DNA from: Asterias rubens
Taxonomy: Eukaryota
Length of the DNA: 64,000 nt
Assembly (NCBI RefSeq): GCF_902459465.1
Contig: NC_047080.1
Coordinates: 4,712,001 to 4,776,000 of the forward strand
Reading direction: 5' to 3'
Part shown: positions 16,681 through 61,969 of the stretch, one piece after another
Numbering within the stretch: position 1 is the first letter of the stretch
Layout of the letters: each line of letters starts with the position of its first letter
Made by a program: the position numbers and the translations under genes
Notes under the pieces: generated by a model
Told to the model about the DNA's origin: nothing
Database searches by the model: none
What the model saw: only the letters and a program-made list of their open reading frames with translations

Positions 16681-18039
16681 CAATGCCAATCCATTCTGAC
16701 AATTGACAGGCAAGGTTCCATAAAGGCTTCACATCCGATCAAATCTAAGCATATCCAATGATTTCCCTACAGGTTCTTGATGTGACTCAACGATTCCTTC
16801 CTTCTTCTGTCCATCTACATTTCTGGATCATAGTAACTACTGCAAGAAAACATCAAGTGTTTTTTTTTAAGACATCTGCTGGAAGAGGAAGCACCATCAT
16901 GGAGTCTTAATTCTTGGATAATGTTTTGCTATTGTTTGGGATCAATCGACTGCCTGCCTGGGACTAGTGAAGATTGGGTTACATAGTTTTAAAGTGAAGA
17001 TACAACAGTCGCTTCTTTTAAATCTTAACACTCTTCTCAAGTTCTGTTGATATCACAGATTTAAATATCTGAAACTTGTATCTTTAGTTTTTTTCCTACA
17101 GCCCCTATAACTTGAAAAAAAAAAAACTTGATATACTCTGGTCTAACAATTCTTAAAATGTGTTTTGACTTGGCATTAATAAATTACTAAGAGAGTTTAT
17201 GCACTCTAAAAGGGGGATTACTGGTCACATGGGGTGTTTTAAGATGTGGTATAAAGACGGCTCCGTGAAGTAGCGAATAAATGGGCCCTATAAAGCATTT
17301 TGTTGTGGAAAAGTTCTATAAAATGCACACTGAACTTTAGACCTTGGCTTTGTTAGCAGCTTTAGACCTTGGCTTTGGTTTGGTCCATTTACAGCGGCCA
17401 GCCACCCAGTCAATACCACCCAATGAAGACTGGCTGCTCACACTGTTATTTCCTAAGTTATACTGAAGTGAATGTTTTCCCCTTTTTGGTGGGACAGGGG
17501 CACTATAAAGTATCATATTTCACGGGTTGCAAGAATTGAAGAAACAAACATTCCAAGCAGTAATTCCCATTGACAGTTGTTTTTAGTGAGAAAACGTGGC
17601 GAGTTGGCAACATCTGATATGAATCTGGTGAATGCTGATCACGAATGGAAACAAAATATATCCAAAATGTAAACAGACCCTCCCTTTTCTCTTTAATGAT
17701 ACACCAAAACAATCTAGAACAGTTGCAACTGGGATGCTCTCTGTGTCTTGCATACCACTACATTAACATTTTAAGACATTTTTTTACAAACAAGTCTGCA
17801 AAACTGGAATGAGTGATAAAGTTTTAAGTCGGTCCAGAGATGGGAATAGAAGAAAATATCCATCAAAATTAGTTTAATCTGAAGAATATCCTGAAATCAT
17901 AAGAAAGGGGTCACTGGGGATGACTCCACACAGTCCCATGTGAAGGGGAATAATTTGGAGTTCGGAAGTTCAATATTATTAAGAGGGTGAAGCTGCTTCG
18001 CTTGAACACATGTACAAGGGGCTTTACTCTTTATTGTCA

Positions 18040-18083
18040 GTCTCCTGACGATGACTAGAGCAAGCTAGTCGAAACGTTGAGAC
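18040..18083 (+). ncRNA. Minimal type I hammerhead ribozyme motif (Penelope-like element pLTR remnant, about 18030-18280)
   Basis: gtctc-CTGACGA-t-gactag-agcaag-ctagtc-GAAAC-GTT-gagac: helix I, intact core, helix II and palindromic AACGTT in place of helix III. Confidence 0.82.
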
Positions 18084-18338
18084 CAATTCAGAACTGACTC
18101 CGTGGCAGTACAGTTAATTACGATCCTATAAGCTAAAGTAGTAGTCCAGTCTATTTTCTATACCATCCGCCCTGGTAACAGTTAAAAAGCAGGACAGTTC
18201 TTTTCAGAACTGAGAAGTCTCCCGAGAAGTCTCCCGGATCTCCTGGCAAGTAGATACACACATGGTGTTACCGCAAACTAAATGCAATGCCTCAAATCAT
18301 GGCTTTACTCTTCAACAAGAAAAGTTCTAAATTGAGCC

Positions 18339-52015: not shown

Positions 52016-52399
52016 TTAAATACAATGGACACTATTGGTAATTGTGAAAGACCAGTCTTCTCAATTGGTGTATCTCAACATGCATAAAATAACAAACCTG
52101 TGAAAAATTGAGCTCAATTGGCCGTCGAAAGTGCGAGATAATAATGAAAGAAAAAACACCCTTGTCACACAAAGTTGTGTGCTTTCAGATGATTGATTTC
52201 GAGACCTTAAATTCTAAATCTGAGGTCTCGAAATCAAATTTGTGAAAAAATACTTCTTTCTCGAAAACTACGTTACTTCAGAGGGAGCCGTTTCTCACAA
52301 TGTTTTATACTATCAACAGCTCCCCATTACTCGTCACCAAGTAAGGTTTTATGCTAATAATTATTTTGAGTAATTACCAATAGTGTCCACTGCCTTTAA
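52016..52399 (+). mobile_element. Kolobok-like MITE family A, complete
   Basis: Family body and right TIR gtgtccactgcctttaa. Confidence 0.87.
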
Positions 52400-52797
52400 G
52401 AACACATGCATATTTGAGAACTCAGTATTTCTTTGCAATGATTTCATAGACAGATCTATCAGGCCACCCGGGATGTTGTTTATAACGGCTTCAATGATTG
52501 ATTTTTATTCTTTTCCCAGTTTAACTTTTACAACTCTTGTTGATGTCATAGTGGAGGAATAGCACAAATGGATTACATCATCTTGGGCAAGTTGTCAAAA
52601 TAAATTACAACAAATTTGTTTGACATTGAACAGAAGTCAAGTTTGGCGGCAATTTGGGGCTTTGATGTGAGCAGAAAGATCACGCCTTCGATATTTACAG
52701 ACTAAAACAATTGCTGTCTGAGTTCTTGACAATGTCAGTGAGAAATAAACACTTGAAGCCCACAACGAGGAACTCAGGACATTCACTCTGTGACTAA

Positions 52798-53104
52798 GTA
52801 GGATTTGAAACTTTGCATGGTGGAAATACGATAGGTTTGCAGTAACACCATGTAATGACTACATGTATCTCTATTGAGTTGGGGTGGTTCTGAAAAGACC
52901 CGCTGGTTTCAACTCGACGTTTTTGATCAGTATGCTCTGATCAGCTTCTGGAAAGCAGAAGATGATCATAGCATACTGATCGAAACGTCGAGCAGAAGAT
53001 TATCATAGCATACTGATCGAAACGTCGAGTTGAAACCAACGGTTCTTTTCAGAACCACCCCAACTCATTAGAGATAGTCATGGTGTTACCGCAAACCTTT
53101 CCAC
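52798..53104. mobile_element. Palindromic hammerhead-like short element, copy 1 (with a tandem-duplicated motif)
   Basis: Inverted arms of the unit CAGAAGA-c-gatcag-agcata-ctgatc-GAAAC-GTC-gagttgaaaccaacggttcttttcagaaccaccccaactcattagagatagtcatt... Confidence 0.8.
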
Positions 53105-53227
53105 ACTCATTGACTGTTATTTTTTTTTACAACAAGAAATTTTTGAATAAGGGAAAAAAAATAATCAAGTGTGTGTATTCATATACAATAGGATTATTGG
53201 TTCAATCAAGCGAAACATTTTCTTTAG

Positions 53228-53607
53228 TTAAAGACAGTAAACAGACTATTGGTAATTGTCAAAGACCAGTCTTCTCACTTGCTGTATGCATAAAATAACA
53301 AACCTGTGAAAATTTGAGCTAAATTGGTCGTTGAAGTTGCGAGATAATAATGAAAAAAAATAAACACTCTTGTCACACAAAGTTGTGTGCTTTCAGATGC
53401 TTGATTTCGAAACCTCAAATTCTAAATCTGAGGTCTCGAAATCAAATTCATGGTAAATTACTTCTTTCTCGAAAACTACGTTACTTCAGAGGGAGCCGTT
53501 TCTCAGAATGTTTTATACTATCAACCTCTCCCCATTACTTGTTACCAAGTAAGGTTTTATGCTAATAATTATTTTGAGTAATTACCAATAGTGTCCACTG
53601 CCTTTTA
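53228..53607 (+). mobile_element. Kolobok-like MITE family A, complete
   Basis: ttaaagacagtaaacagactattgg ... gtgtccactgcctttta. Confidence 0.85.
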
Positions 53608-53609
53608 GG

Positions 53610-53890
53610 TGAGGTTTGCAGTAGCACCATGGTTAAATCTCTTTTCTGTGAATTTTGATATTCTCATTATCAACACTCTTATAATATTAGAGCCAAACGA
53701 GAAGAGAGAAGACAATAAAAACATTTTAGTTTTAGATGTGGGAGGAAAACCCAAGAGAATTATTCCAAGGAAAACCCTTGCAGTCAAGTAGGGACTGAAA
53801 ACCCAAATCCACTTAAAGCCCCATGTGGGATTCGAACCGGGGTCCCAGAGGTGAAAGGCGAGACAAGACACCACTAAACCAACCTGACTG
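53610..53890 (-). mobile_element. tRNA-derived SINE with V/Meta-domain-like body
   Basis: ggtttagtggtgtcttgtctcgcctttcacctctgggaccccggttcgaatccc then gggttttcctcccacatc; head-only relative at about 30040-30120. Confidence 0.65.
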
Positions 53891-54005
53891 ACAACTTTTT
53901 AGTTGTTTTTGCTCCGAAAAAAACCGGTGGTTGACAATTCAACGTTTTGATCAGTATGCTCGAATCATGCGCCTTTGCAGGAGAAGTTTTTGTATTTCCA
54001 TGTAG

Positions 54006-54368
54006 TTAAAGGGAAGGTACACGTTTGGTAATTGTCAAAGACCAGTCTTCTCACTTGGTGTATCCCAACATAAGCATAAAATAACAAGCCTGTGAAAATT
54101 TGAGCTAAATTGCGAGAAAATGATGAGAGAAAAAACACCCTGGTTGAATGAATTTGTGTGCTTTCAGATAGGAATAAAAGACTTCCAGCTAGAAGTCTTT
54201 TGCTATTTTAGTGAGAAACTACCTCTTTCTCAAAATCTATGCTACTTCAGAGGGAGCCGTTTCTTACAATGTTTTATACTATCAATAGCTCTCCAATGCT
54301 CATTACCAAGTCAGTTCTTAAGTTAATATTTGTTTTGAGTAATTACCAAATGTGTACCTTCCCTTTAA
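54006..54368 (+). mobile_element. Kolobok-like MITE subfamily A2
   Basis: ttaaagggaaggtacacgtttggtaatt ... aattaccaaatgtgtaccttccctttaa. Confidence 0.85.
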
Positions 54369-55732
54369 GGAAAAGAAAGTTCATGGTTTTATACAGATTG
54401 GGAGTCTGTATCTGTATTTTAAATGTTTTGTGTCAGTAAAAAGATTGTTTAGGCCGACTACAACAAAATTCCCTATTGCATAAATCCAACAAGCTTTTCA
54501 TTCAATCAGTTTGAACTAGGTCTACTTGTGTCAATGTAATTCCCTGTAACTCGACTCACAATAAAATGTAGAATCAAAGAGAAATCAGCGACCATTCAGT
54601 GTAGACCACAAAAAGAATTATAAATTTTCAAATTTGTGCATGCAACGCATGAGTGAAAGTCTAAATGCCTTTCTTCTGCCTTTTGTTGGGGGCAGTCGGT
54701 ACAAGTCAGGAGGGCTTTACTTGTATTTAACAAAGCAAATTTTGGGGCTATTTATTGGTTTTTGTGGCATTTGAAAAGAGAAAAATTTGATTGATTATTG
54801 TGTAGACGAACACAGAGGCACCTTTGGTGCATAGTTGGACTTAGGGAAGGTACCCACTGCCTCAAAACCCCCTTTTGTTGAGTTGTAGGTGATTATGAAT
54901 GGAGATTTCAGAAAGGACTTGTTTTTATAATATTTGGTAGGTAGAAACCTCTTCCTCCATGGTAGGACTAACTAAATAAAAAACTATAATGGCTGGAACG
55001 ATAACATGGATTGTTTGTACTTCTGCAAGAGTTTGAAATGGGTAGGCCTACCCAAAGTCTCACATTTCCTTCAAAATCTAACAAAATCTTTACAATGTAA
55101 TGAAACTTTAATTTCAATGTCAAATAGCACAGTTAAAAAAACAACAGCACAGGTAAAAAAAAACCCAGCAGCACACGTAAAAAAACAGCAGCACACGTAA
55201 AAAAAACAGATGCTCAGTGCGGCAAATGAAATGTAACTACCAATGTCTGTTCATGGTCTGTTGTTGACAAATATATTGCTTCACCATTCACTACATAACA
55301 TCCCACCAAAATGTAGACAATCTACCCAGTATCAACATAATTACAACGTCATGCCTGGGGCTGTTGCCCATAATAATCAAGGTAATGTACCAATGCGCCA
55401 ATGACCCAATGTACTGTTGATCAGAAACACCTCAGCTCGAGTCCAGTGCTCTTCTTATCGTTATGACCGCGAAACTCTAGCCACGTATATATTTTTTTTC
55501 ACTGAGCAGTTTCATGAAACTTTCATCATTATAAACTGCTTCAGACACACAAGTGGCTGCAGAGCTGCTCACTACATTTTTATCCGTACAAGAAAGTACC
55601 CCCCTCTATTGTTGAAATCAGTTCAATCTTAGTTTAGTGCCATAACAGTCGAACCAAATGGCGCCCTCATGTAGTGTTCTTAGCTCTACTAACATTAATT
55701 ACTGACGTGGCTTAAAGACAAAAATGTTTGAT

Positions 55733-55990
55733 CAGGGCCCAATTTCATAGAGCTGCTAAGCACACAAATTTTCTAAGCATGAAATTTCTTCCTAGATAAA
55801 AAAAAGATTACCATCACAATTTCCATGTGATTTTCAGGATAAACAAACAACAGCTAAACACCAGTAACAAGCAATATATATACAACAAACTGACAAATGG
55901 AAATTTGGTAGGTAATCCTGTTTTTATCAAGGAAGACATTTCATGCTTAGCAAATTTTTGTGCTTAGCAGCTCTATGAACTTGGGCCCTG
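55733..55990. mobile_element. GGGCCCAATTTCATAGAGC MITE copy
   Basis: cagggcccaatttcatagagctgctaagcac ... gtgcttagcagctctatgaacttgggccctg. Confidence 0.82.
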
Positions 55991-56376
55991 GAGAGGGCTA
56001 TGTTGAAGCCTTAGTATACAAGACCTCAAAAAAACCAACGGCACCGAAAGCAGTTGCCGTTGTGCCCTGCAATTTTGCTCTAATACAAGCCGACATTTTT
56101 CCTAAGTGCCCCCAACCAGAGGAAAATTGACGTGCCCCTTTAAGAGTGGAGTTCAAGGCCTGGCACATGGACATGTACACTTAGAAGCTATAATGCTGGC
56201 TAACGCAGCAAGAAAAATGTGGACATTTTCATCATCAATAAAGAAACCTTTCAAGTACAAGTTGATATAAAAATATAAACGCTGAAAGATTGTTTCTAAG
56301 TAGTTGTCAACTTTGAGAAAAATTGAAATCACATTTAAAGTACGTCTTGAGGAAAGATAAGAAAAAGAACACTTAC

Positions 56377-56436
56377 CTGATGGAAGAGTTGGTGTTGTGC
56401 CAAGTATCCAACTTTATCCTTCCCTTGGGTTAGTGC
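56377..56436 (-). CDS. KDM8: KDM8 coding exon 6 (ALTQGKDKVGYLAQHQLFHQ)
   Basis: ttttgccag| acceptor, CAG|gtaagt donor; GYLAQHQLF motif. Confidence 0.94.
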
Positions 56437-57062
56437 CTGGCAAAATAGAAATGCACAAGTACTTGGATGATAACTTAAAGGTAGGGTCATACATTGGTAA
56501 CGTGTAAATTGTTTCCAAACGCTTACTTGTTATACAGATGATTTGGGGTTGAACAAAGAAGAATGAATGGGACTCGAACCAATGACCTCTGGATTAGCAT
56601 GCCGGAGCTCTACCAACTGAGCTGTCTAGCCCTATGTTGGCGGTCTCCCTATTTTGTCAATATCTTTGTTTAGGTATGCCAGTCGGAAGCCATACAACTT
56701 TTAACTTGTGTAGGCAGGGATCACACCCAAATGATAAATATGGTAGAGGTTGTAAGCATCTGAAGTGCACCAATTGGACAGAAATCAATAAAAAGAACAT
56801 AAAAGAATTCAAATCTCCAAAACTCACCTCAAGGCAAGTTTTGGAGGTCAAGTTTCAGTGGTGTCCGTTCGTGAATGCTGTGGCCAGAGATGTGGTTGAT
56901 ACTCACTGTAGCTGTACCGTCCCTTGATGTATGGATTGTATGCTCTTTATGAAAATACCGCACACAGTTTTTTCTTCTTCTGTTTTCTTATCAAATTAAC
57001 TGTATTTATCCACCCAACCACTCAACCACAGGGACTTTTATTCCTCATATTGACTCTGGTCT

Positions 57063-57439
57063 TTAAAGGCAGTGGACACTATTGGTAATTACTCAAATTA
57101 ATTATTAGCACTATACCTTACTTGGTAACGTGTAATGGGGAGAGGTTGACAGTATAAAACAATGTGAGAAACGGCTCCCTCTGAAGTGACGTAGTTTTCG
57201 AGAAGAAGTAATTTTCCCCGAATTTGATTTTGAGACCTCAGATTTAGAATTTGAGGTCTCGAAATCAAGCATCTGAAAGCACACAACTTCGTCTGACAAG
57301 GGTTTTTGTTTTTTCATAGTTACTCAAAACTTCGACGACCAATAGAGCTCAAATTTTCACAGGTTTGTTGATTTATACATATGTTGAGATACACCGAGGT
57401 GAGAAGACTGGTCTTCAGACTGGTGTCCAGTGTCTTTAA
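57063..57439 (-). mobile_element. Kolobok-like MITE family A, inverted
   Basis: TTAA-flanked, both termini. Confidence 0.86.
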
Positions 57440-57532
57440 AAAAGAATTATGGCCCAGTGGATATTTTTAGCAACAAGCCCCAGGGGTCTTGTGGATTTCC
57501 CCCAAAAATTCAATCCTTGCTCAAACACGTAC

Positions 57533-57665
57533 CTTTTCCTGGATGTACTTGGTGATAAAGTTTGACAACGTCATCAGAGATTGTGACCATGACTCGTCGG
57601 TGTATTTGGCTCCAAGCTCAATAGGGATAGTCCGCTGACCTGCCACTTCATGAAGATACCTCAAA
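57533..57665 (-). CDS. KDM8: KDM8 coding exon 5 (SLRYLHEVAGQRTIPIELGAKYTDESWSQSLMTLSNFITKYIQEK)
   Basis: ttgtag| acceptor (phase 2), AAG|gtacgt donor; close to human [33 protein letters not shown] (recalled). Confidence 0.95.
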
Positions 57666-58074
57666 CTACAAGAAGATACAAAAGAAAGTAACCTCAGTTT
57701 CAATTAATGTAGTATTTTTGGGACACTAGGTGGCGGCAGACTAACGTGGTTGATCCACTATCTGAACTTTTGAAATGTACCTGGCATATCTGCTACCAAC
57801 TAGCATTCTAAAGATTACCAATGTTTTCAAAGAACCTTTTTTAGAAATAAAGTGTTGACAAGTGTTCTCATGATGGATCAAGAGAATGATGATGATGATG
57901 ATGATGATGAAGTGTTCTCATAAGATTTGTTTTCCTGTCTTAATGACAAGACTTTGATAAAATAATAATAGCAAAACTTTTGGAACAAGGCTCAATTGAG
58001 AAACCAAAGTGCTATTTATTTTCCTGAAAGCAAGTGTTAAATTAAAATATGATTTTTGGGGTTGAACAAAGAAT

Positions 58075-58147
58075 TGACTAGAGTGGGATTCGAACCATTG
58101 ACCTCCGGATTAACGTGCCGGCGCTCTACCAACTGAGCTATCTAGCC
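58075..58147 (-). pseudogene. tRNA-Asn(GTT)-like cloverleaf inside a dispersed repeat (58048-58230); relatives at 56540-56700, 1278-1352, 51515-51570, 62083-62125
   Basis: 7-bp acceptor stem GGCTAGA/TCTAGTC, perfect D arm GCTC-AGTTGGTA-GAGC, anticodon loop ACGTTAA, TTCGAAT loop; mismatched T stem and no U33 argue against a functional tRNA. Confidence 0.7.
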
Positions 58148-58237
58148 ATACATTGGCAGTGTCCCTATTTTGTCAATATCTTTGTTCGGGGGGTGCCAGT
58201 CAGAAGCCATACAACCACACAACCGTTAACTGCCGTG

Positions 58238-58700
58238 TAGCCAGGGATAATAATAATAATAATAATAATGAAAGCATTTATATAGCGCCCCACAAAGAAC
58301 GGAGCGCTTTACAATATACAAAGAAACAAACAATGCAAAGACAAAGATACAAACAAAAAACAGTACAAGCAAAAACAAAAAATGGCCAGATTAAACAAAT
58401 AAATGGGTTTTGAGCATATTTTTGAACCGTTCCAGTGTGTTGGCTTCCCGGATGTTACGGGGAAGGGAATTCCAGAGCCGGGGAGCAGCGGCTTGAAAGG
58501 CATGATCTCCTGCGCGTGATCTAGTTTTGGTGATGTGAAAAAGTGTTTTCTCGTACGATGAGCGGGTGGCATAGGGGGATGATTTGAACGAAATGAGTTC
58601 TTGAAGATATGAAGGTGCTGTAGAGTGGATACATTTGGTGTTGATAGTAACATGGATCAAGGAAAAAAGCATTCGGAGATGGAACATGTGGCCTTACTGT
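58238..58700 (-). mobile_element. L2-clade LINE 3' fragment (ORF2 C-terminus plus (ATT)n tail)
   Basis: APSYLQELI...TRSS...GDHAFQAAAPRLWNSLPRNIREANTLERFKNMLKTHLF is the typical L2/CR1 ORF2 end; followed by aagcgct..gcgctatataaatg and TTA repeats. Confidence 0.9.
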
Positions 58701-58712
58701 CTCAATCCTTAC

Positions 58713-58891
58713 CTCCACTGTCTGGCCCCCATCGCTGGCCAGTGGTCCATGGCTCCCTGGATGATAACAGGTGTCTTAGTCTCCATGAATTGGGAATAGA
58801 AGTGAAGTAGAGATGGACAGGTCACTCTGGGGATCTCATGCTGTTTTGAGATCACTGGGGCTTGGAGGAGAGATGGAAGCTCAACTGGTGC
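58713..58891 (-). CDS. KDM8: KDM8 coding exon 4 (KHQLSFHLLQAPVISKQHEIPRVTCPSLLHFYSQFMETKTPVIIQGAMDHWPAMGARQW-); 5' boundary uncertain
   Basis: Matches the KDM8 PRL..PSL..F......PVI..G..DHWP...W motif; AG|gtaagg donor in phase 2 fits exon 5. A phase-0 join to exon 3 needs the caag| acceptor at 58892-58893 (or a nearby in-frame AG), not the upstream ctag|. Confidence 0.88.
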
Positions 58892-58957
58892 TTCTTGTAG
58901 CTAGAGAGAATAAAACCAACACTTCTTATAAGGAACAATAATATAAAGAAATTCTGC

Positions 58958-59201
58958 TTAAAGACAGTTATTGGTAATTTATTGGTAATTTGTCAAAGAC
59001 CAGTCTCCTCACTTGGTGTATCTCAACATACATGTATGCATAAAATAACAAACCTGTGAAAATTTGAGCTCAATTGGTCGTCGAAGTTGCGAGATAATAA
59101 TGAAAGAAAAAACACCCCTGTCACACGAAGTTGTGTGCATTCGGATACTTGATTTCGTGACCTCAAATTCTAAGTCTGAGGTCTCGAAATCAAATTCGTG
59201 G
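58958..59201 (+). mobile_element. Kolobok-like MITE family A, 5' part, ending at an RTE fragment
   Basis: Family body ends at caaattcgtgga, where RTE-like sequence begins. Confidence 0.82.
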
Positions 59202-59590
59202 ACTCTGACCGCAAATCAAGAAAGAGCACTAGACGGCGTATATACAAGAATGCTATGGATGGCCCTTGATGTGCACTGGAAGATCATATGCCAAACTCCC
59301 AGCTCTACGCTACCCTACCAAGGGTAACTGTTAAGATCAGGGAGTGAAGGATGAGGCTTGCTGGCCACTGTGTAGGCCATCCAGAGCTAGCTGTGAGCCC
59401 CCTAGTTCTCTGGGAACCCATTGACGGAATCAGAAATAAGGGCAGGAGAAGAACTTCATTCGTAGAACAGCTGAAGGAAGGACGCTACACAACAGGAAAC
59501 ATCTGAGCTTAGGACGCTGATGCTGGACCTCGATGCTTGGAAGACGACCATCAGAGTTTCCCGAGAAGGCATCGGCTGAAGACATCCTCT
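59198..59590 (+). mobile_element. RTE-clade LINE 3' fragment, degraded
   Basis: WTLTANQERALDGVYTRMLWMALDVHW/...LPRVTVKIRE-RMRLAGHC...LVLWEPIDGIRNKGRRR matches the RTE RT C-terminal motifs WTLT..LDG.YTRMLR, R+R.AGH and LW.P..G.R..GR. Confidence 0.85.
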
Positions 59591-59669
59591 CGCTCAACTG
59601 ATAATTCATCTTGGATATTTTACTCAGGGGACATTCTTTTTAATTGGAAGATAAATGGGAGTTACTTAC

Positions 59670-59813
59670 AAGACATTTAGGATGAACTTCTCGATGATCA
59701 GTGGATGAAGTTGCTTTGAAGGATTTCTGTAAGGCTCTTGCTAAGTGGCTTAAGATGTTGTCAAGGATGGGAGCTCCCATGAGTAATCCCATGTCACATG
59801 CTTCCAGAGCTCT
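59670..59813 (-). CDS. KDM8: KDM8 coding exon 3 (RALEACDMGLLMGAPILDNILSHLARALQKSFKATSSTDHREVHPKCL)
   Basis: tctag| acceptor, CTT|gtaagt donor; CDMGLLMGA motif of KDM8. Confidence 0.93.
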
Positions 59814-60002
59814 CTAGACCAAAAAGTAGATATTCAATTCATGAGGTTTAGTTAGTAATAAATAATACGTATGCAGTACTGAGTAATAGGTTGAGTGAAC
59901 TGGAATTTGCAAAACAATTTTTTTTTAATTTGTTTAAATTTCCTTCCTCCAATGTTTGGTGAGTTATAAAAGACTTTTTACTGTCTTTGAATCTTTCTTT
60001 TA

Positions 60003-60685
60003 TAACGGAACATTACAGAATTGGTTTTGCTAACAAAACTGTTGCTGGCAGTGTAAACATTTTATGTAATCCATCATAAACATAAACTGACAAACCTGTA
60101 GAAATATAGAAAGGTTTGCGATAACACCATGTAATGACTATCTCTAATGAGTTGGGGTGGTTCTGAAAAGAACCGTTGGTTTCAACTCGACAGTTCGATC
60201 AGTATGCTCTGATCGTCTTCTTCTACAGCTATCTCCAAAGACGCTCAGAGCATACTGATCGAAACGTTGAGTTGAAACCAACGGTTCTTTTCAGAACCAC
60301 CCCACCCCAACTCATTAGAGATAGTCATTACATGGTGTTACCACAAACCTTTGTATATCGTATTTCCACCATGCAAAGTTTCAAATCCTACAAACCTGTA
60401 GAAGTTTGAGATCAATCGGCCAGCTGGGTCTCAAGAGAATAATGAAAAAACAGTTAAAAATTTTGCATTGCATCGATGCCAAAACAAAAATGAGTAAATG
60501 CTCACTGAGCGATAAACTCCACACGCGAAATTAGATTATTTATTTCTCATCAAATATGACATTTCAGACACAAATATTTCAAGGGATGTTTTCTCTTATC
60601 ATCATTATTAGAGCGTGTAAGTTTTATAGTAAGTCTGTGATCTTCACGATTTATGTTTCTTACCAACTCCGTAACGTTCCTTAAA
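60003..60685 (+). mobile_element. Kolobok-like MITE (GGAAC-type termini) interrupted by a hammerhead-like palindromic insert
   Basis: ggaacattacagaattgg ... ccaactccgtaacgttccttaa; family subterminal block split at acaaacctgtagaa. Confidence 0.7.
60104..60389. mobile_element. Palindromic hammerhead-like short element, copy 2, flanked by a 14-bp TSD
   Basis: acaaacctgtagaa at 60090-60103 and 60390-60403; same inverted unit. Confidence 0.83.
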
Positions 60686-60896
60686 AAAAATACTAACGCT
60701 AGCTGCAGCAAAAATAAGTTCTGTAAAATAAAGAACGAGAAAGGTTTTGATTTTTGCTTGTTTTAGGCTTGCCTTTTGTTACTCCTAGAACTATGAGGTT
60801 GGTTCCGCTATCTTCTCATTGAGATCATAGCAGAACGTCGTAACAAACCTCATTGTTCTAGGAGTACATGGAGCAGTATGAGATCTACTATTTTAC

Positions 60897-61151
60897 CTCT
60901 ACTAATTGTGCCTGCAGTCCATCCCTGTCTTCATCCAGTTCACCATAAATGCTCATAACTTTGAGAAGAGATGCGTATGAATAGACATGTCTCCAGGCTA
61001 TGTTGACATCCTTCCAGTGACCCGTGTTGAGCTTCTCCCAGCTGAAGTTCAGAAGATCCTCTGATTTAGCAGAGCTTTGTTGAAGATCACTTTGGAAGAC
61101 ATCTTCTGCACAGTCTTGGAGTAGAGAGTGGACATCATGACCAACTGTCTC
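60897..61151 (-). CDS. KDM8: KDM8 coding exon 2 (85 codons; ETVGHDV...LLNFSWEKLNTGHWKDVNIAWRHVYSYASLLK...QLVE)
   Basis: aaacag| acceptor, GAG|gtaaaa donor, open frame; SWEKLNTGxWxDV..WR.VY is the KDM8 N-terminal motif. Confidence 0.93.
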
Positions 61152-61186
61152 CTGTTTATTAGGTTAGAGGAAATAAATTCAACTTT

Positions 61187-61452
61187 AGTAGGATTTGAAA
61201 CGTTGCATGGTGGAAATATGATATGGAAAGGTTTGCTGTAACACATTGGCATGACTATCTCTACTAAATGAGTTGGGGTGGTTCTAAAAGAACTTTTCGA
61301 TCAGTACGCTCCGAGTCTGATCGTCTTCTGGAGAAAGCTCAGGAGACGACTACTTAGTTAGAGCATACTGATTGAAACGTCCAGTAGAAACCAACGGTTC
61401 TTTTCAAAACCACCCCAACTCATAGAGATAGTCATTATGGTGTTGCCGCAAA
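61187..61452. mobile_element. Palindromic hammerhead-like short element, copy 3 (more diverged)
   Basis: Same two-arm geometry; fragments also at about 53920-53965 and 29905-29935. Confidence 0.75.
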
Positions 61453-61578
61453 ATTCAACTTAGTAGCCTAAGTAACACTAACAATAATGGTAATTTATTC
61501 TTATTTAGCGTTTCACAATAAAAAATCTCAAAACGATGTACACTGGAGACAGTTTAAATATATTATTATTAACATTCA

Positions 61579-61969
61579 AGGAACACGTTGCCTTGGATCG
61601 GACGAGTTGGTCTATGAAAAGCGTTTGAAACCGTTTGTTATGAAATGCATATGGTTAGAAAGATGTTTTAAAAGTAGAATATAATGATCCACACAAGTAT
61701 CACTCAAAATTGCACGGTTTTCATTTTACGTCGCAAACTAACATGGTCGGCCATTTTTTTATGGGAGTCAAAGTTTTGACGGACTCCCATAAATGGCCGA
61801 CCATGTTTGTCAACGAGGTAAAACGAAAACCATGCCATTTCGAGGCATATTTGTGTAGATCATTGTATTCTACTTTTAAAACATCTTTCTAACCATATCG
61901 ATGTTATAACAAACGGTTACAGGACGCTTTTCAAAGACCAACTCGACCGACCCAAGGCAACGTGTTCCT
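61579..61969. mobile_element. Almost fully palindromic Kolobok-like MITE family C (about 390 bp) in KDM8 intron 1
   Basis: AGGAACACGTTGCCTTGG ... CCAAGGCAACGTGTTCCT; arms pair to the centre (tatgggagtc/gactcccata); degenerate TTAA flanks. Confidence 0.85.

What the first reader, a model, noticed from the sequence alone, without database searches (positions are those of the whole stretch)
52798..61452. Family of about 300-bp palindromic elements with hammerhead-like motifs on both strands
Seen: three loci (52798-53104, 60104-60389, 61187-61452) each consist of two inverted copies of one unit, with the motif C-A-GAAGA-c-GATCAG-agcata-CTGATC-GAAAC-GTY-GAG next to the centre on each strand. All three share the same asymmetry: a long arm ending ...caaagtttcaaatcctac and a short arm ending near ...gcaaacctttc, in either genomic orientation. 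Established: Penelope-like elements and animal retrozymes carry minimal type I hammerheads lacking helix III, and PLE insertions often have inverted ends. Inference: the shared geometry suggests the inverted dimer itself is the mobile unit, a rod-like RNA with ribozyme motifs in both polarities. That would be a non-autonomous PLE or retrozyme-like family that behaves like a MITE and resembles viroid-like RNAs in architecture. The family has A at core position 4 (CAGAAGA rather than CUGANGA), so activity is not assured.
Basis: partly seen in the sequence, partly recalled or inferred. Interest (0 to 1): 0.78.

Follow-up and report, generated by a model that had tools for sequence, protein, structure and literature searches.

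The report
Inverted-pair insertions of Penelope retroelement tails
The ~300-bp palindromes are real, but they are a by-product of how Penelope-like jumping genes insert (both DNA strands are primed, leaving two head-to-head copies of the element's end), not a self-contained rod-shaped mobile RNA; that end carries a one-letter-mutated hammerhead ribozyme followed by a hairpin of the kind that ends histone mRNAs.

Summary
Observation confirmed: three loci are near-perfect palindromes of one family, with one arm about 31 nt longer.

The reading is only partly right. The link to Penelope-like elements (PLEs) and the minimal hammerhead hold. An autonomous copy (L061: RT plus C-terminal GIY-YIG) ends in the same module.

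The inverted dimer is not the mobile unit. In 69 unbiased tail-bearing loci:
- about a third have an inverted arm, and about 10% are full palindromes; monomers are common;
- 8-15 bp target duplications (TSDs) flank each insertion;
- outer ends are fixed: the longer (tail-bearing) arm ends at +118 and the inverted arm at about +84..+88, counted from the ribozyme cut;
- inner ends vary independently.

This is the published PLE signature: an inverted 5'-truncated copy, a 30-40 nt tail, both strands primed, and two reverse-transcription start sites.

CAGAAGA is a derived U4-to-A change; a sister family has CUGAAGA, with compensatory changes in helix II and in the stem-loop. Insertion 5' ends pile up exactly at the predicted cut (93 hits against 28 and 3 at control boundaries), which hints at cleavage in vivo. 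RNA-seq shows no discrete ends.

Each arm also carries a histone 3' stem-loop (Rfam, above threshold). This scan had already noted the hammerhead-plus-stem-loop pairing elsewhere in this genome. The palindromes are ordinary PLE biology; the module is an unusual variant.

The parts
52784..52795 (.). Locus 1 target-site duplication, left copy (CACTCTGTGACT), followed by 2 extra A before the element
   Evidence: Read. It matches 53104-53115 (CACTCATTGACT) at 10 of 12 positions.
52798..52952 (-). Locus 1 tail-bearing arm (element sense is on the minus strand); the 3' tail ...CAAAGTTTCAAATCCTAC lies at 52798-52830; the arm's 5' end is about 36 nt upstream of the ribozyme cut
   Evidence: BLAST to the family reference, 88% identity; alignment.
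52956..52992 (+). Locus 1 extra 37-nt tandem copy of the hammerhead-like unit (CAGAAGA...GAAACGTC|GAG)
   Evidence: Direct-repeat family D4, spacing 37; sequence.
52993..53103 (+). Locus 1 short arm: hammerhead-like motif 52993-53026, predicted cut after 53026, histone-type stem-loop 53041-56, ending at ...CGCAAACCTTTCC without a tail
   Evidence: Rfam RF00032 hit at 53036-53081, 35.7 bits against a gathering score of 34.
53104..53115 (.). Locus 1 target-site duplication, right copy
60090..60103 (.). Locus 2 target-site duplication, left copy (ACAAACCTGTAGAA, perfect 14 bp)
   Evidence: identical to 60390-60403.
60104..60221 (-). Locus 2 short (inverted) arm; its outer end ATATAGAAAGG... is the complement of ...CCTTTCTATAT, the internal RT start site; stem-loop on the minus strand
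   Evidence: BLAST 97%; Rfam RF00032 at 60134-60179 minus strand, 35.7 bits.
60226..60391 (+). Locus 2 tail-bearing arm: decayed core, GAAACGTT|GAG, stem-loop, terminal stem CATGGTG/CACCATG, and tail ending CCTAC at 60391 (the last 2 nt overlap the TSD)
   Evidence: BLAST 94%; Rfam RF00032 at 60278-60324, 32.3 bits.
60390..60403 (.). Locus 2 target-site duplication, right copy
61175..61185 (.). Locus 3 target-site duplication, left copy (AAATTCAACTT)
   Evidence: matches 61451-61461.
61188..61335 (-). Locus 3 tail-bearing arm (sense on the minus strand), with an internal deletion of about 20 nt that removes the cleavage site and spacer
   Evidence: 77% identity with gaps.
61360..61452 (+). Locus 3 short arm, from about -22 to about +74, ending ...GCCGCAAA, earlier than usual; its last A's overlap the TSD
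   Evidence: weak RF00032 hit at 61391-61436.
61451..61461 (.). Locus 3 target-site duplication, right copy
53913..53961 (-). Fragment of a related subfamily (hammerhead 3' half plus spacer)
   Evidence: BLAST 84%; repeat family D10.
18031..18290 (+). Related monomeric element with a canonical core (CTGACGA-T-GACTAG...CTAGTC-GAAAC-GTT|GAG), a stem-loop variant AGTTCT/AGAACT at 18196-18211, and the shared 3' end ...CATGGTGTTACCGCAAAC

Best explanation
The palindromes are insertion products of a Penelope-like retroelement family, not a palindromic mobile unit. The family consists of an autonomous element (RT plus C-terminal GIY-YIG endonuclease) and very many 5'-truncated or non-autonomous copies of its 3' end. 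That 3' end is a module. In order it holds a minimal type I hammerhead (CUC helix I strand, CAGAAGA core, a bulged C, a 6-bp helix II, GAAAC, GUC then the cut, GAG). After 14 nt comes a histone-mRNA-type stem-loop (GGUUCU-UUUC-AGAACC). Next is a 7-bp terminal stem (CAUGGUG/CACCAUG), then a tail ending ...AAAUCCUAC(UU). At integration the endonuclease makes a staggered cut, which gives the 8-15 bp TSD, and both target strands can prime reverse transcription. One strand starts at the distal site (+118 from the ribozyme cut, the 'tail' end). The other starts at the internal site (about +84..+88, inside the loop of the terminal stem). Each cDNA runs to the 5' end of its RNA, and the two cDNAs are then joined head to head by template jumping, often with a few filler bases that are frequently A-rich. 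When both RNAs are the common short form (5' end about 41 nt upstream of the cut) the product is a roughly 285-bp near-perfect palindrome with one arm 30-34 nt longer, which is what sits at the three window loci. Shown here: the geometry, the TSDs, the independent inner truncations, the monomers and the autonomous partner. Inferred from published in vitro work: dual-strand priming and template jumping. The hammerhead-like motif is a real PLE minimal hammerhead carrying a derived U4-to-A substitution. An excess of insertion 5' ends exactly at the predicted cut suggests that some template RNAs were self-cleaved; I put about even odds on this.
For: (1) TSDs of variable length (8-15 bp) flank whole insertions in 29 full-length copies, with one constant end and one variably shortened end. 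(2) Unbiased sample of 69 exact-tail loci. An inverted arm is present in about 22-24. Its outer end lies at +80..+92, mostly +84..+88, in about 19 of 21, whereas its inner end ranges over -683, -46..-28, +2, +7, +11, +50, +57 and +59. Tail-arm 5' ends are independently spread, with clusters at -46..-33 (about 21 loci) and -3..+4 (about 11). Only 7 are full palindromes. Clear cases are L048 (full inverted arm, tail arm starting at G+1, 14-bp TSD), L040 and L032 (inverted arm only 24-30 nt), L033 (tail arm is only the tail) and L031 (the inverted arm is an 820-nt piece of PLE with the EN ORF). (3) Autonomous partner: the L061 ORF matches RVT_1 at 2.4e-10 and GIY-YIG at 5.9e-5. About 250 nt of 3' UTR then runs into the same CCAGAAGAC hammerhead-like motif and stem-loop, ending ...TTTTCTATA. 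The endonuclease protein has 568 first-look candidates in the genome. (4) Arms of one copy share non-consensus bases far more than chance (26 against 6.7 +/- 2.4, maximum 15 in 2000 shuffles). Variants shared among copies are not arm-specific apart from CpG sites. Centre fillers differ between copies. (5) Literature: an inverted 5'-truncated copy plus a 30-40 bp tail at one end is typical of PLEs (PMC8557442). A PLE protein cleaves and extends both strands, RT starts at two adjacent internal sites, and the tail is the stretch between them (PMC11167929). Minimal hammerheads on opposite strands 100-700 bp apart have been noted, as has a 6-bp helix II with a bulged 5' base (PMC4209133). (6) Hammerhead authenticity: the sister family has CTGAAGA-C-GAGCAG-AGTATA-CTGTTC-GAAAC-GTC|GAG, with a compensatory change in helix II. 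(7) 5' ends at the cut: 93 hits at +1 against 28 at +4 and 3 at -4. With upstream context printed, about 60 of 86 hits are true ends, including dimers with both arms starting at +1. (8) RNA reads run from the module into the tail and across inverted junctions, so such copies are transcribed.
Against: (a) In the in vitro work both RT start sites were used on both strands. Here dimers almost always pair one distal with one internal start (only 1 of about 21 has tails at both ends), so there is an extra asymmetry that I cannot explain. (b) I cannot exclude that some complete palindromes were later re-copied as units: L003 and L011 have similar A-rich centres but different TSDs. (c) The dominant 5' end about 41 nt upstream of the cut is unexplained; it could be a transcription start, a processing site or an RT stop. 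(d) RNA-seq shows no pile-up of read ends at the ribozyme cut or at the stem-loop, and U4 is a conserved core base, so cleavage may be rare or absent. (e) The sample comes from the first 13 Mb of one contig and is conditioned on an exact 19-nt tail. (f) The RT was identified only through the generic RVT_1 model plus domain order; no PLE-specific phylogeny was done.
Confidence: 0.85

Rival explanations
1. One reading: the inverted dimer is itself transcribed and retrotransposed as one rod-like RNA with ribozymes in both polarities (retrozyme-like or viroid-like, behaving like a MITE).
For: Dozens of full-length palindromes at 85-91% identity share the same outer ends. Palindromic copies are transcribed, as shown by reads that change strand at the junctions. 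L003 and L011 have similar A-rich centres. The predicted hairpins are very stable, -107 to -182 kcal/mol.
Against: Only about 10% of tail-bearing insertions are full palindromes. The inner ends of the two arms vary independently and follow the same distribution as monomer 5' ends. Centres differ between copies. No arm-specific inherited variants were found. If read-through RNA of a palindrome were the template, the far end should carry 5' flank or be truncated at random places, yet it sits at +84..+88. No circular-junction reads or discrete ends were seen.
Confidence: 0.06
2. The palindromes arose after insertion, by DNA-level fold-back duplication or repair at monomeric copies, unrelated to the element's own enzyme.
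For: Local rearrangements do occur in this family: the 37-nt tandem duplication in locus 1 and mini-arrays of parts of the module.
Against: TSDs flank the whole dimer and not one arm. The second arm's outer end is at a fixed element position 30-34 nt from the 3' end, which random fold-back would not give. The same geometry is a documented PLE trait and matches the two RT start sites seen in vitro.
Confidence: 0.04
3. A DNA transposon derivative (MITE or foldback element) with terminal inverted repeats.
For: It is short, palindromic, abundant and sometimes nested in other repeats.
Against: TSD length varies from 8 to 15 bp. The termini are asymmetric. There are 5'-truncated monomers. An RT/GIY-YIG element carries the same 3' end. 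Extra A/AA or TT bases occur at the tail junction.
Confidence: 0.01

Closest known systems
Penelope-like elements (canonical EN+ type, RT followed by C-terminal GIY-YIG) and their complex insertions (Evgen'ev & Arkhipova 2005; Arkhipova 2006; Craig et al. 2021, PMC8557442; Frangieh et al. 2024, PMC11167929)
   Same: The partner has RT plus C-terminal GIY-YIG. Copies show heavy 5' truncation and variable TSDs. An inverted 5'-truncated copy is placed head to head. A 30-34 nt tail is present at one end only, matching two RT start sites. The hammerhead sits just upstream of the RT start region; in Anolis PAc the cut-to-start distance is about 85-92 nt, and here it is about 84-88 nt to the first site.
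   Different: The core has A in place of U4. A histone-type stem-loop lies between the ribozyme cut and the RT start sites; I found no description of this in the papers searched. Dimers almost always pair one distal with one internal start. A discrete short form of about 160 nt dominates.
Minimal hammerhead ribozymes of metazoan PLEs (Cervera & de la Pena 2014, PMC4209133)
   Same: Type I topology. No helix III, with GAAAC-GUC giving a palindromic ACGU for dimer pairing. A 6-bp helix II with a bulged base at its 5' side. A short helix I (CUC/GAG). Very abundant, mostly single or paired on opposite strands.
   Different: CAGAAGA instead of CUGANGA in this family; the sister family in the same genome has CUGAAGA. 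No activity data exist.
Animal (non-LTR) retrozymes, small circRNA-producing tandem repeats with type I hammerheads (Cervera & de la Pena 2020; Li et al. 2026 preprint, 10.64898/2026.07.22.740005)
   Same: Short non-coding derivatives of PLE ends that carry the hammerhead; highly represented in RNA.
   Different: Retrozymes are direct tandem repeats cut to unit length and circularised. The window loci are inverted pairs flanked by TSDs, and the reads showed no unit-length ends.
Histone mRNA 3' stem-loop (Rfam RF00032), the SLBP-binding signal
   Same: A 6-bp stem of the form GGYYYU/ARRRCC, a UUUC loop, CCAAC 5' flank and ACCCC 3' flank. Scored above Rfam's gathering threshold.
   Different: It lies in a retroelement tail and not after a histone ORF. 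Thousands of copies exist. There was no sign of 3' cleavage there in RNA reads. Identity to the host's own histone stem-loops was not tested by me.
MITEs and foldback DNA transposons
   Same: Small, palindromic, abundant.
   Different: Variable TSD length, asymmetric ends, truncated monomers, and an RT-encoding partner.

Membership tests
Penelope-like element (EN+) | Single ORF with reverse transcriptase and GIY-YIG endonuclease | tested here: met
   The L061 ORF at 3741-5273 matches RVT_1 at 2.4e-10 and GIY-YIG at 5.9e-5, both above the Pfam cut-offs, with EN C-terminal. The L031 EN fragment matches at 1.2e-5.
Penelope-like element (EN+) | RT belongs to the PLE/TERT-related clade | not tested
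   Only the generic RVT_1 model and bacterial RT models matched. There was no PDB hit and no phylogeny was made.
Penelope-like element (EN+) | The short copies share their 3' end with the autonomous element | tested here: met
   The L061 3' UTR runs into the same hammerhead-like motif, stem-loop and ...CTATA end. The 5' extension of L047 matches that 3' UTR.
Penelope-like element (EN+) | Insertions are 5'-truncated, with variable TSDs and an inverted or tandem partial copy | tested here: met
   TSDs of 8-15 bp; inverted arm in about a third of 69 loci; wide range of 5' ends.
Penelope-like element (EN+) | A 30-40 bp tail extension present at one end only | tested here: met
   The tail arm ends at +118 and the inverted arm at +84..+88, a difference of 30-34 nt. 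Only 1 of about 21 dimers has a tail at both ends.
Hammerhead ribozyme (minimal type I, PLE type) | Core CUGANGA ... GAAA with C3-G8 | tested here: not met
   The family consensus is CAGAAGA (A at position 4): 47+ of about 50 intact copies, none with CTGAAGA. GAAA, C3 and G8 are present. The sister family has canonical CTGAAGA.
Hammerhead ribozyme (minimal type I, PLE type) | Helix II supported by covariation; helix I pairing; cleavage triplet NUH | tested here: met
   GATCAG/CTGATC here against GAGCAG/CTGTTC in the sister family, a compensatory change. CUC/GAG forms helix I in the predicted fold. The triplet is GUC, or GUU in some copies.
Hammerhead ribozyme (minimal type I, PLE type) | Self-cleavage after H17 | tested here: inconclusive
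   Indirect support: insertion 5' ends are enriched exactly at G+1 (93 against 28 and 3; about 60 of 86 verified). Against: no read-end pile-up in four RNA-seq runs. A biochemical assay is not possible with these tools.
Hammerhead ribozyme (Rfam models) | Match to an Rfam hammerhead covariance model | tested here: not met
   No hammerhead hit even at E <= 10. The canonical-core monomer at 18040 is also missed, so these models do not cover hammerheads without helix III.
Animal retrozyme | Direct tandem units, each with a hammerhead, giving unit-length circular RNA | tested here: not met
   The window loci are inverted pairs with TSDs. No unit-length ends or circular junctions for them appeared in the reads.
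Histone 3' stem-loop (RF00032) | Covariance-model score at or above the gathering threshold | tested here: met
   35.7 bits against 34 at 53036-53081 and 60134-60179; 32.3, 24.1 and 23.9 bits for the decayed arms.
Histone 3' stem-loop (RF00032) | Functions in 3'-end cleavage or SLBP binding | tested here: inconclusive
   No RNA ends at the stem-loop. The stem is kept by compensatory changes across families: GGTTCT/AGAACC, GGCTCT/AGAGCC, AGTTCT/AGAACT, AGTCCT/AGGGCT. Binding cannot be tested here.
MITE / foldback DNA transposon | Fixed-length TSD and symmetric terminal inverted repeats | tested here: not met
   TSDs are 8-15 bp. One end is 30-34 nt longer. Truncated monomers exist.

The most novel reading that the evidence does not exclude
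The hammerhead plus histone stem-loop is a working unit of this retroelement lineage. The ribozyme, even with A4, cuts 14 nt upstream of an SLBP-type hairpin, so that templates begin with a histone-mRNA-like end signal. The element would then borrow the host's histone-RNA machinery (SLBP binding, stability, or S-phase timing) for its RNA or for recruiting its RT. The hairpin is kept by compensatory changes across at least two to four diverged families, which argues for selection on structure.
Probability: 0.25. Interest if true: 0.75.

Novelty: new variant of a known kind. Interest (0 to 1): 0.4.

Why it matters
The palindromes themselves need no new biology. They are natural products of the Penelope-like insertion mechanism, and thousands of genomic examples here independently fit the recent in vitro result that both target strands are primed from two start sites about 30 nt apart. 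Three points could interest specialists:
- Dimers pair one distal with one internal start almost without exception, an asymmetry the in vitro work did not show.
- Insertion 5' ends pile up exactly at the ribozyme's predicted cut. This would be rare in vivo evidence that these weak minimal hammerheads process template RNA, and here with a U4-to-A core.
- The ribozyme is followed at once by a histone-mRNA-type hairpin that co-varies across families, a pairing I could not find described.

For genome annotation, these loci should be labelled as PLE fragments, not as MITEs, miRNA-like hairpins or histone 3' ends.

Tried and rejected
- Rfam found no hammerhead at gathering scores or at E <= 10. I do not count this against the motif, because the canonical-core monomer at 18040 is also missed. 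The miRNA-family hits at the palindromes score far below their thresholds and only reflect the hairpin shape.
- MITE/DNA-transposon reading: rejected on TSD variability and asymmetric ends.
- LINE-mobilised SINE reading: dropped once an RT/GIY-YIG element with the same 3' end was found.
- Unit-copying of palindromes: tested with symmetric and arm-specific variants and with centre junctions. No support, apart from one similar pair of A-rich centres.
A pattern for canonical stem-loops was swamped by a second repeat family. So I did not test whether the element's hairpin copies the host's own signal, nor any U7/HDE complementarity.
- ESM Atlas was busy. PDB gave no hit. NCBIfam gave only generic RT matches.
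- RNA reads: no discrete ends and no circular junctions attributable to these loci. A 'goes back 47' joint starting at G+1 is best explained by genomic mini-arrays seen.
- I did not identify the organism. Earlier notes call it a sea star, and the run labels are coded.

Full report
**Observation.** The three loci are as described. Each is a near-perfect inverted repeat of one unit of about 125-155 nt. One arm ends ...CAAAGTTTCAAATCCTAC and the other ends near ...CGCAAACCTTTC(TATAT). The motif CAGAAGA-C-GATCAG-AGCATA-CTGATC-GAAAC-GTY|GAG lies next to the centre on each strand. Locus 1 has an extra 37-nt tandem copy of that motif. Locus 3 has an internal deletion of about 20 nt. The cores of locus 2 are further decayed.

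The family is abundant:
- at least 2629 first-look candidates for the 286-bp unit, with dozens of full-length copies at 85-91% identity;
- 2013 hits to a 32-nt core motif, against 0 in the reversed control;
- 5949 hits to the 19-nt tail, against 4 in the control.

Rfam gives no hammerhead hit even at E <= 10. It does place a histone 3' stem-loop (RF00032) above its gathering score in each arm: CCAAC-GGTTCT-TTTC-AGAACC-ACCCC, 14 nt after the predicted cut. Each window locus is also flanked by a target-site duplication: 14 bp and perfect at locus 2, about 12 bp at locus 1, about 11 bp at locus 3.

**Retroposition, not a MITE.** I aligned 29 full-length copies with their flanks. TSD length varies from 8 to 15 bp. 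One end is constant (...CCTAC, often followed by one or two extra bases). The other end is sometimes shortened. The centres differ between copies, with different fillers that are often A-rich.

**Is the dimer the unit?** I took an unbiased sample: all 69 non-array exact matches to the tail that were listed on the first 13 Mb of contig 1. Each was mapped onto a reference numbered from the predicted ribozyme cut.

Tail arms begin at many positions:

| 5' end of tail arm (relative to cut) | Loci |
|---|---|
| further upstream than -47 (into the element's 3' UTR) | 4 |
| -46..-33 | about 21 |
| -32..-4 | 5 |
| -3..+4 | about 11 |
| +5..+83 | 17 |
| +84 or later (only the tail) | about 11 |

An inverted arm is present in about 22-24 loci.
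- Its outer end is tightly fixed at +80..+92, mostly +84..+88, which is 30-34 nt short of the tail end at +118.
- Its inner end varies over -683, -46..-28, +2, +7, +11, +50, +57 and +59.
- Only 7 loci are full palindromes like those in the window.

Individual cases make the point:
- L048 has a full inverted arm joined to a tail arm that starts at the first base after the cut, within a 14-bp TSD.
- L040 and L032 have inverted arms of only 24-30 nt.
- L033 has a tail arm that is only the tail.
- L036 is a plain monomer with an 11-bp TSD.

So the two arms are independent draws from one distribution of 5' ends, joined head to head at insertion.

A second test agrees. In 36 full palindromes, the two arms of a copy share non-consensus bases far more often than arms of different copies (26 against 6.7 +/- 2.4, never above 15 in 2000 shuffles). 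Variants shared among copies show no arm preference apart from CpG decay. Arm-to-consensus identity is 96.4% and arm-to-arm identity within a copy is 94.0%. The arms were therefore alike at insertion and have decayed independently since.

**Autonomous partner.** In L031 the 'inverted arm' is an 820-nt piece ending in the module and containing a GIY-YIG ORF. Searching the genome with that protein gave 568 first-look candidates. In L061, a 510-aa ORF has RVT_1 (2.4e-10) followed by GIY-YIG (5.9e-5). About 250 nt of 3' UTR then runs straight into ...CCAGAAGAC-GATCAG...GAAACGTC|GAGTTAATCC, the stem-loop and ...TTTTCTATA. The 5' extensions of longer copies (L047, L102) match that 3' UTR. Two subfamilies differ in the spacer: GAGTTAATCC goes with L061, and GAGTTGAAACC is the form in the window copies.

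**Comparison with the literature.**
- Craig et al. 2021 describe PLE insertions as heavily 5'-truncated. They often have an inverted 5'-truncated copy placed head to head and a 30-40 bp tail at one end only.
- Frangieh et al. 2024 show in vitro that a PLE protein cleaves and extends both target strands. Reverse transcription starts at two adjacent internal sites, and the tail is the sequence between them. In their element the ribozyme cut lies about 85-92 nt from the start site. Here it lies 84-88 nt from the first site.
- Cervera & de la Pena 2014 define the metazoan PLE minimal hammerhead: no helix III, a 6-bp helix II with a bulged base at its 5' side, and a short helix I. They note pairs on opposite strands.

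The window palindromes are this known geometry, in the case where both arms are the common short form.

**The hammerhead-like motif.** A sister family in the same genome reads TCTC-CTGAAGA-C-GAGCAG-AGTATA-CTGTTC-GAAAC-GTC|GAG-ACCAAACC-GGCTCTTTTCAGAGCC. That is a canonical core, the same bulged C, a compensatory change in helix II, a different spacer, and a compensatory change in the stem-loop. The window family's CAGAAGA is therefore a derived U4-to-A substitution. It is present in the autonomous copy and in 47+ of about 50 intact copies that I hold, and none has CTGAAGA. Core changes usually cost most of the activity, although rare natural variants are tolerated.

I found indirect evidence for cleavage by counting genome-wide where a non-element dinucleotide directly precedes an element boundary:

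| Boundary tested | Hits |
|---|---|
| G+1 (the predicted cut) | 93 |
| +4 (control) | 28 |
| -4 (control) | 3 |

With 14 nt of upstream context printed, 13 of 86 hits are mutated intact copies. About 45 have unrelated flank, and about 15 are dimers, several with both arms starting at G+1. About 8 are mini-arrays.

Against this, four raw-read RNA runs show no place where many reads begin or end:
- The element body is at 1-40x depth and the module at about 4000x.
- Of the laid reads, 93-94% run on into unrelated flank, and the two mate orientations are equal.
- This is read-through of dispersed copies, with many reads continuing into the tail and some crossing inverted junctions.

**The stem-loop.** It is a good histone-type hairpin by Rfam's own threshold. 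It is kept by compensatory changes in at least four variants: GGTTCT/AGAACC, GGCTCT/AGAGCC, AGTTCT/AGAACT and AGTCCT/AGGGCT. I could not compare it with the host's histone genes. I found no paper pairing a histone stem-loop with PLEs or hammerheads in the library searched. Earlier notes of this scan report the same pairing on other windows of this genome, and one unfollowed note reports a similar palindrome. The pairing is therefore not new to the scan.

**Open points.**
- Why dimers almost always combine one distal and one internal start.
- What sets the dominant 5' end about 41 nt upstream of the cut.
- Whether the A4 ribozyme really cleaves.
- What the hairpin does.
- Whether some palindromes were re-copied as units (L003 and L011 have similar centres).

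**Verdict.** The PLE and minimal-hammerhead parts of the reading are supported. The central inference, a palindromic rod-like mobile RNA, is not supported. The palindromes are ordinary PLE insertion products, and the module they carry is an unusual variant.

Noticed in passing
G000:C1:7752229-7754539; L043 (G000:C1:2692315-2695983): Tandem arrays with a 65-68 bp period, made of just the terminal stem-loop plus tail of the element (CATGGTG...CACCATGCAAAGTTTCAAAYCTTAC). This looks like repeated initiation or local amplification of the RT start region.
   Followed up: partly
G000:C5:614024-614956; C4:8310365; C138:8687: Mini-arrays whose unit starts exactly at the first base after the ribozyme cut and holds only the spacer and the histone-type hairpin (period about 44-78 nt). 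RNA reads show a matching 'goes back 47' joint starting at G+1.
   Followed up: partly
Genome-wide; e.g. G000:C1:5559305-5559453, C1:18134429-18134564, C1:23308150-23308314: A sister PLE-tail family with about 1000-1600 pattern hits. It has a canonical CUGAAGA hammerhead followed after 8 nt by a canonical GGCTCT/AGAGCC histone-type hairpin, and it also often forms head-to-head pairs 100-130 bp apart.
   Followed up: partly
69 sampled loci (L031-L050, L062-L110); L061 5524/5525 in RNA reads: The commonest 5' end of the short form lies 33-46 nt upstream of the cut (GCWTTCTCCAG...), in both subfamilies, even though the autonomous element's 3' UTR is continuous there. It could be a transcription start, a processing site or an RT stop; this is unexplained.
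   Followed up: no
L003, L011, L020, L027, L032, L063, L064 (centres of dimers): A-rich filler of 10-25 nt between the two arms of several dimers, different in sequence from copy to copy. It is possibly non-templated addition during template jumping.
   Followed up: no
L061:5533 joined to 5620/5621 on opposite strands (RNA runs X21-X24): One inverted junction type (tail arm from -31 joined to an inverted arm ending at +57, the foot of the terminal stem CATGGTG) is seen in 84-210 reads per mate orientation in each run. L032 and L040 have nearly the same junction. This is either a hot spot for strand switching or one highly expressed locus.
   Followed up: no
window 52016-52400, 53230-53608, 54006-54376, 57055-57398, 58964-59214; tRNA-like hits at 58075-58147 and 56559-56631: A different dispersed repeat family (repeat families D1-D7 and inverted pairs I1-I7) surrounds the loci. 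Two tRNA-like segments (Rfam tRNA, 42.3 and 26.6 bits) suggest tRNA-derived SINEs. Locus 2 is inserted inside one of these repeats (the TSD ACAAACCTGTAGAA lies within the repeat's ACAAACCTGTGAAAA... motif).
   Followed up: no
window 61579-61969: Another foldback of about 390 bp directly beside locus 3 (arms 61626-61756 / 61791-61921 at 85%, and 61579-61624 / 61924-61969 at 93%). The same outer-arm sequence occurs upstream of the element in L037.
   Followed up: no
window 55733-55990: An inverted repeat with arms of 97 nt (88% complementary, 64 nt apart), unrelated to the family studied.
   Followed up: no
window 61451-61470: At locus 3 the target sequence just past the TSD reads AGTAGCC, which resembles the element's own end AGTAGGA on the other side. 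This may be microhomology between the target and the RNA 3' end at priming.
   Followed up: no
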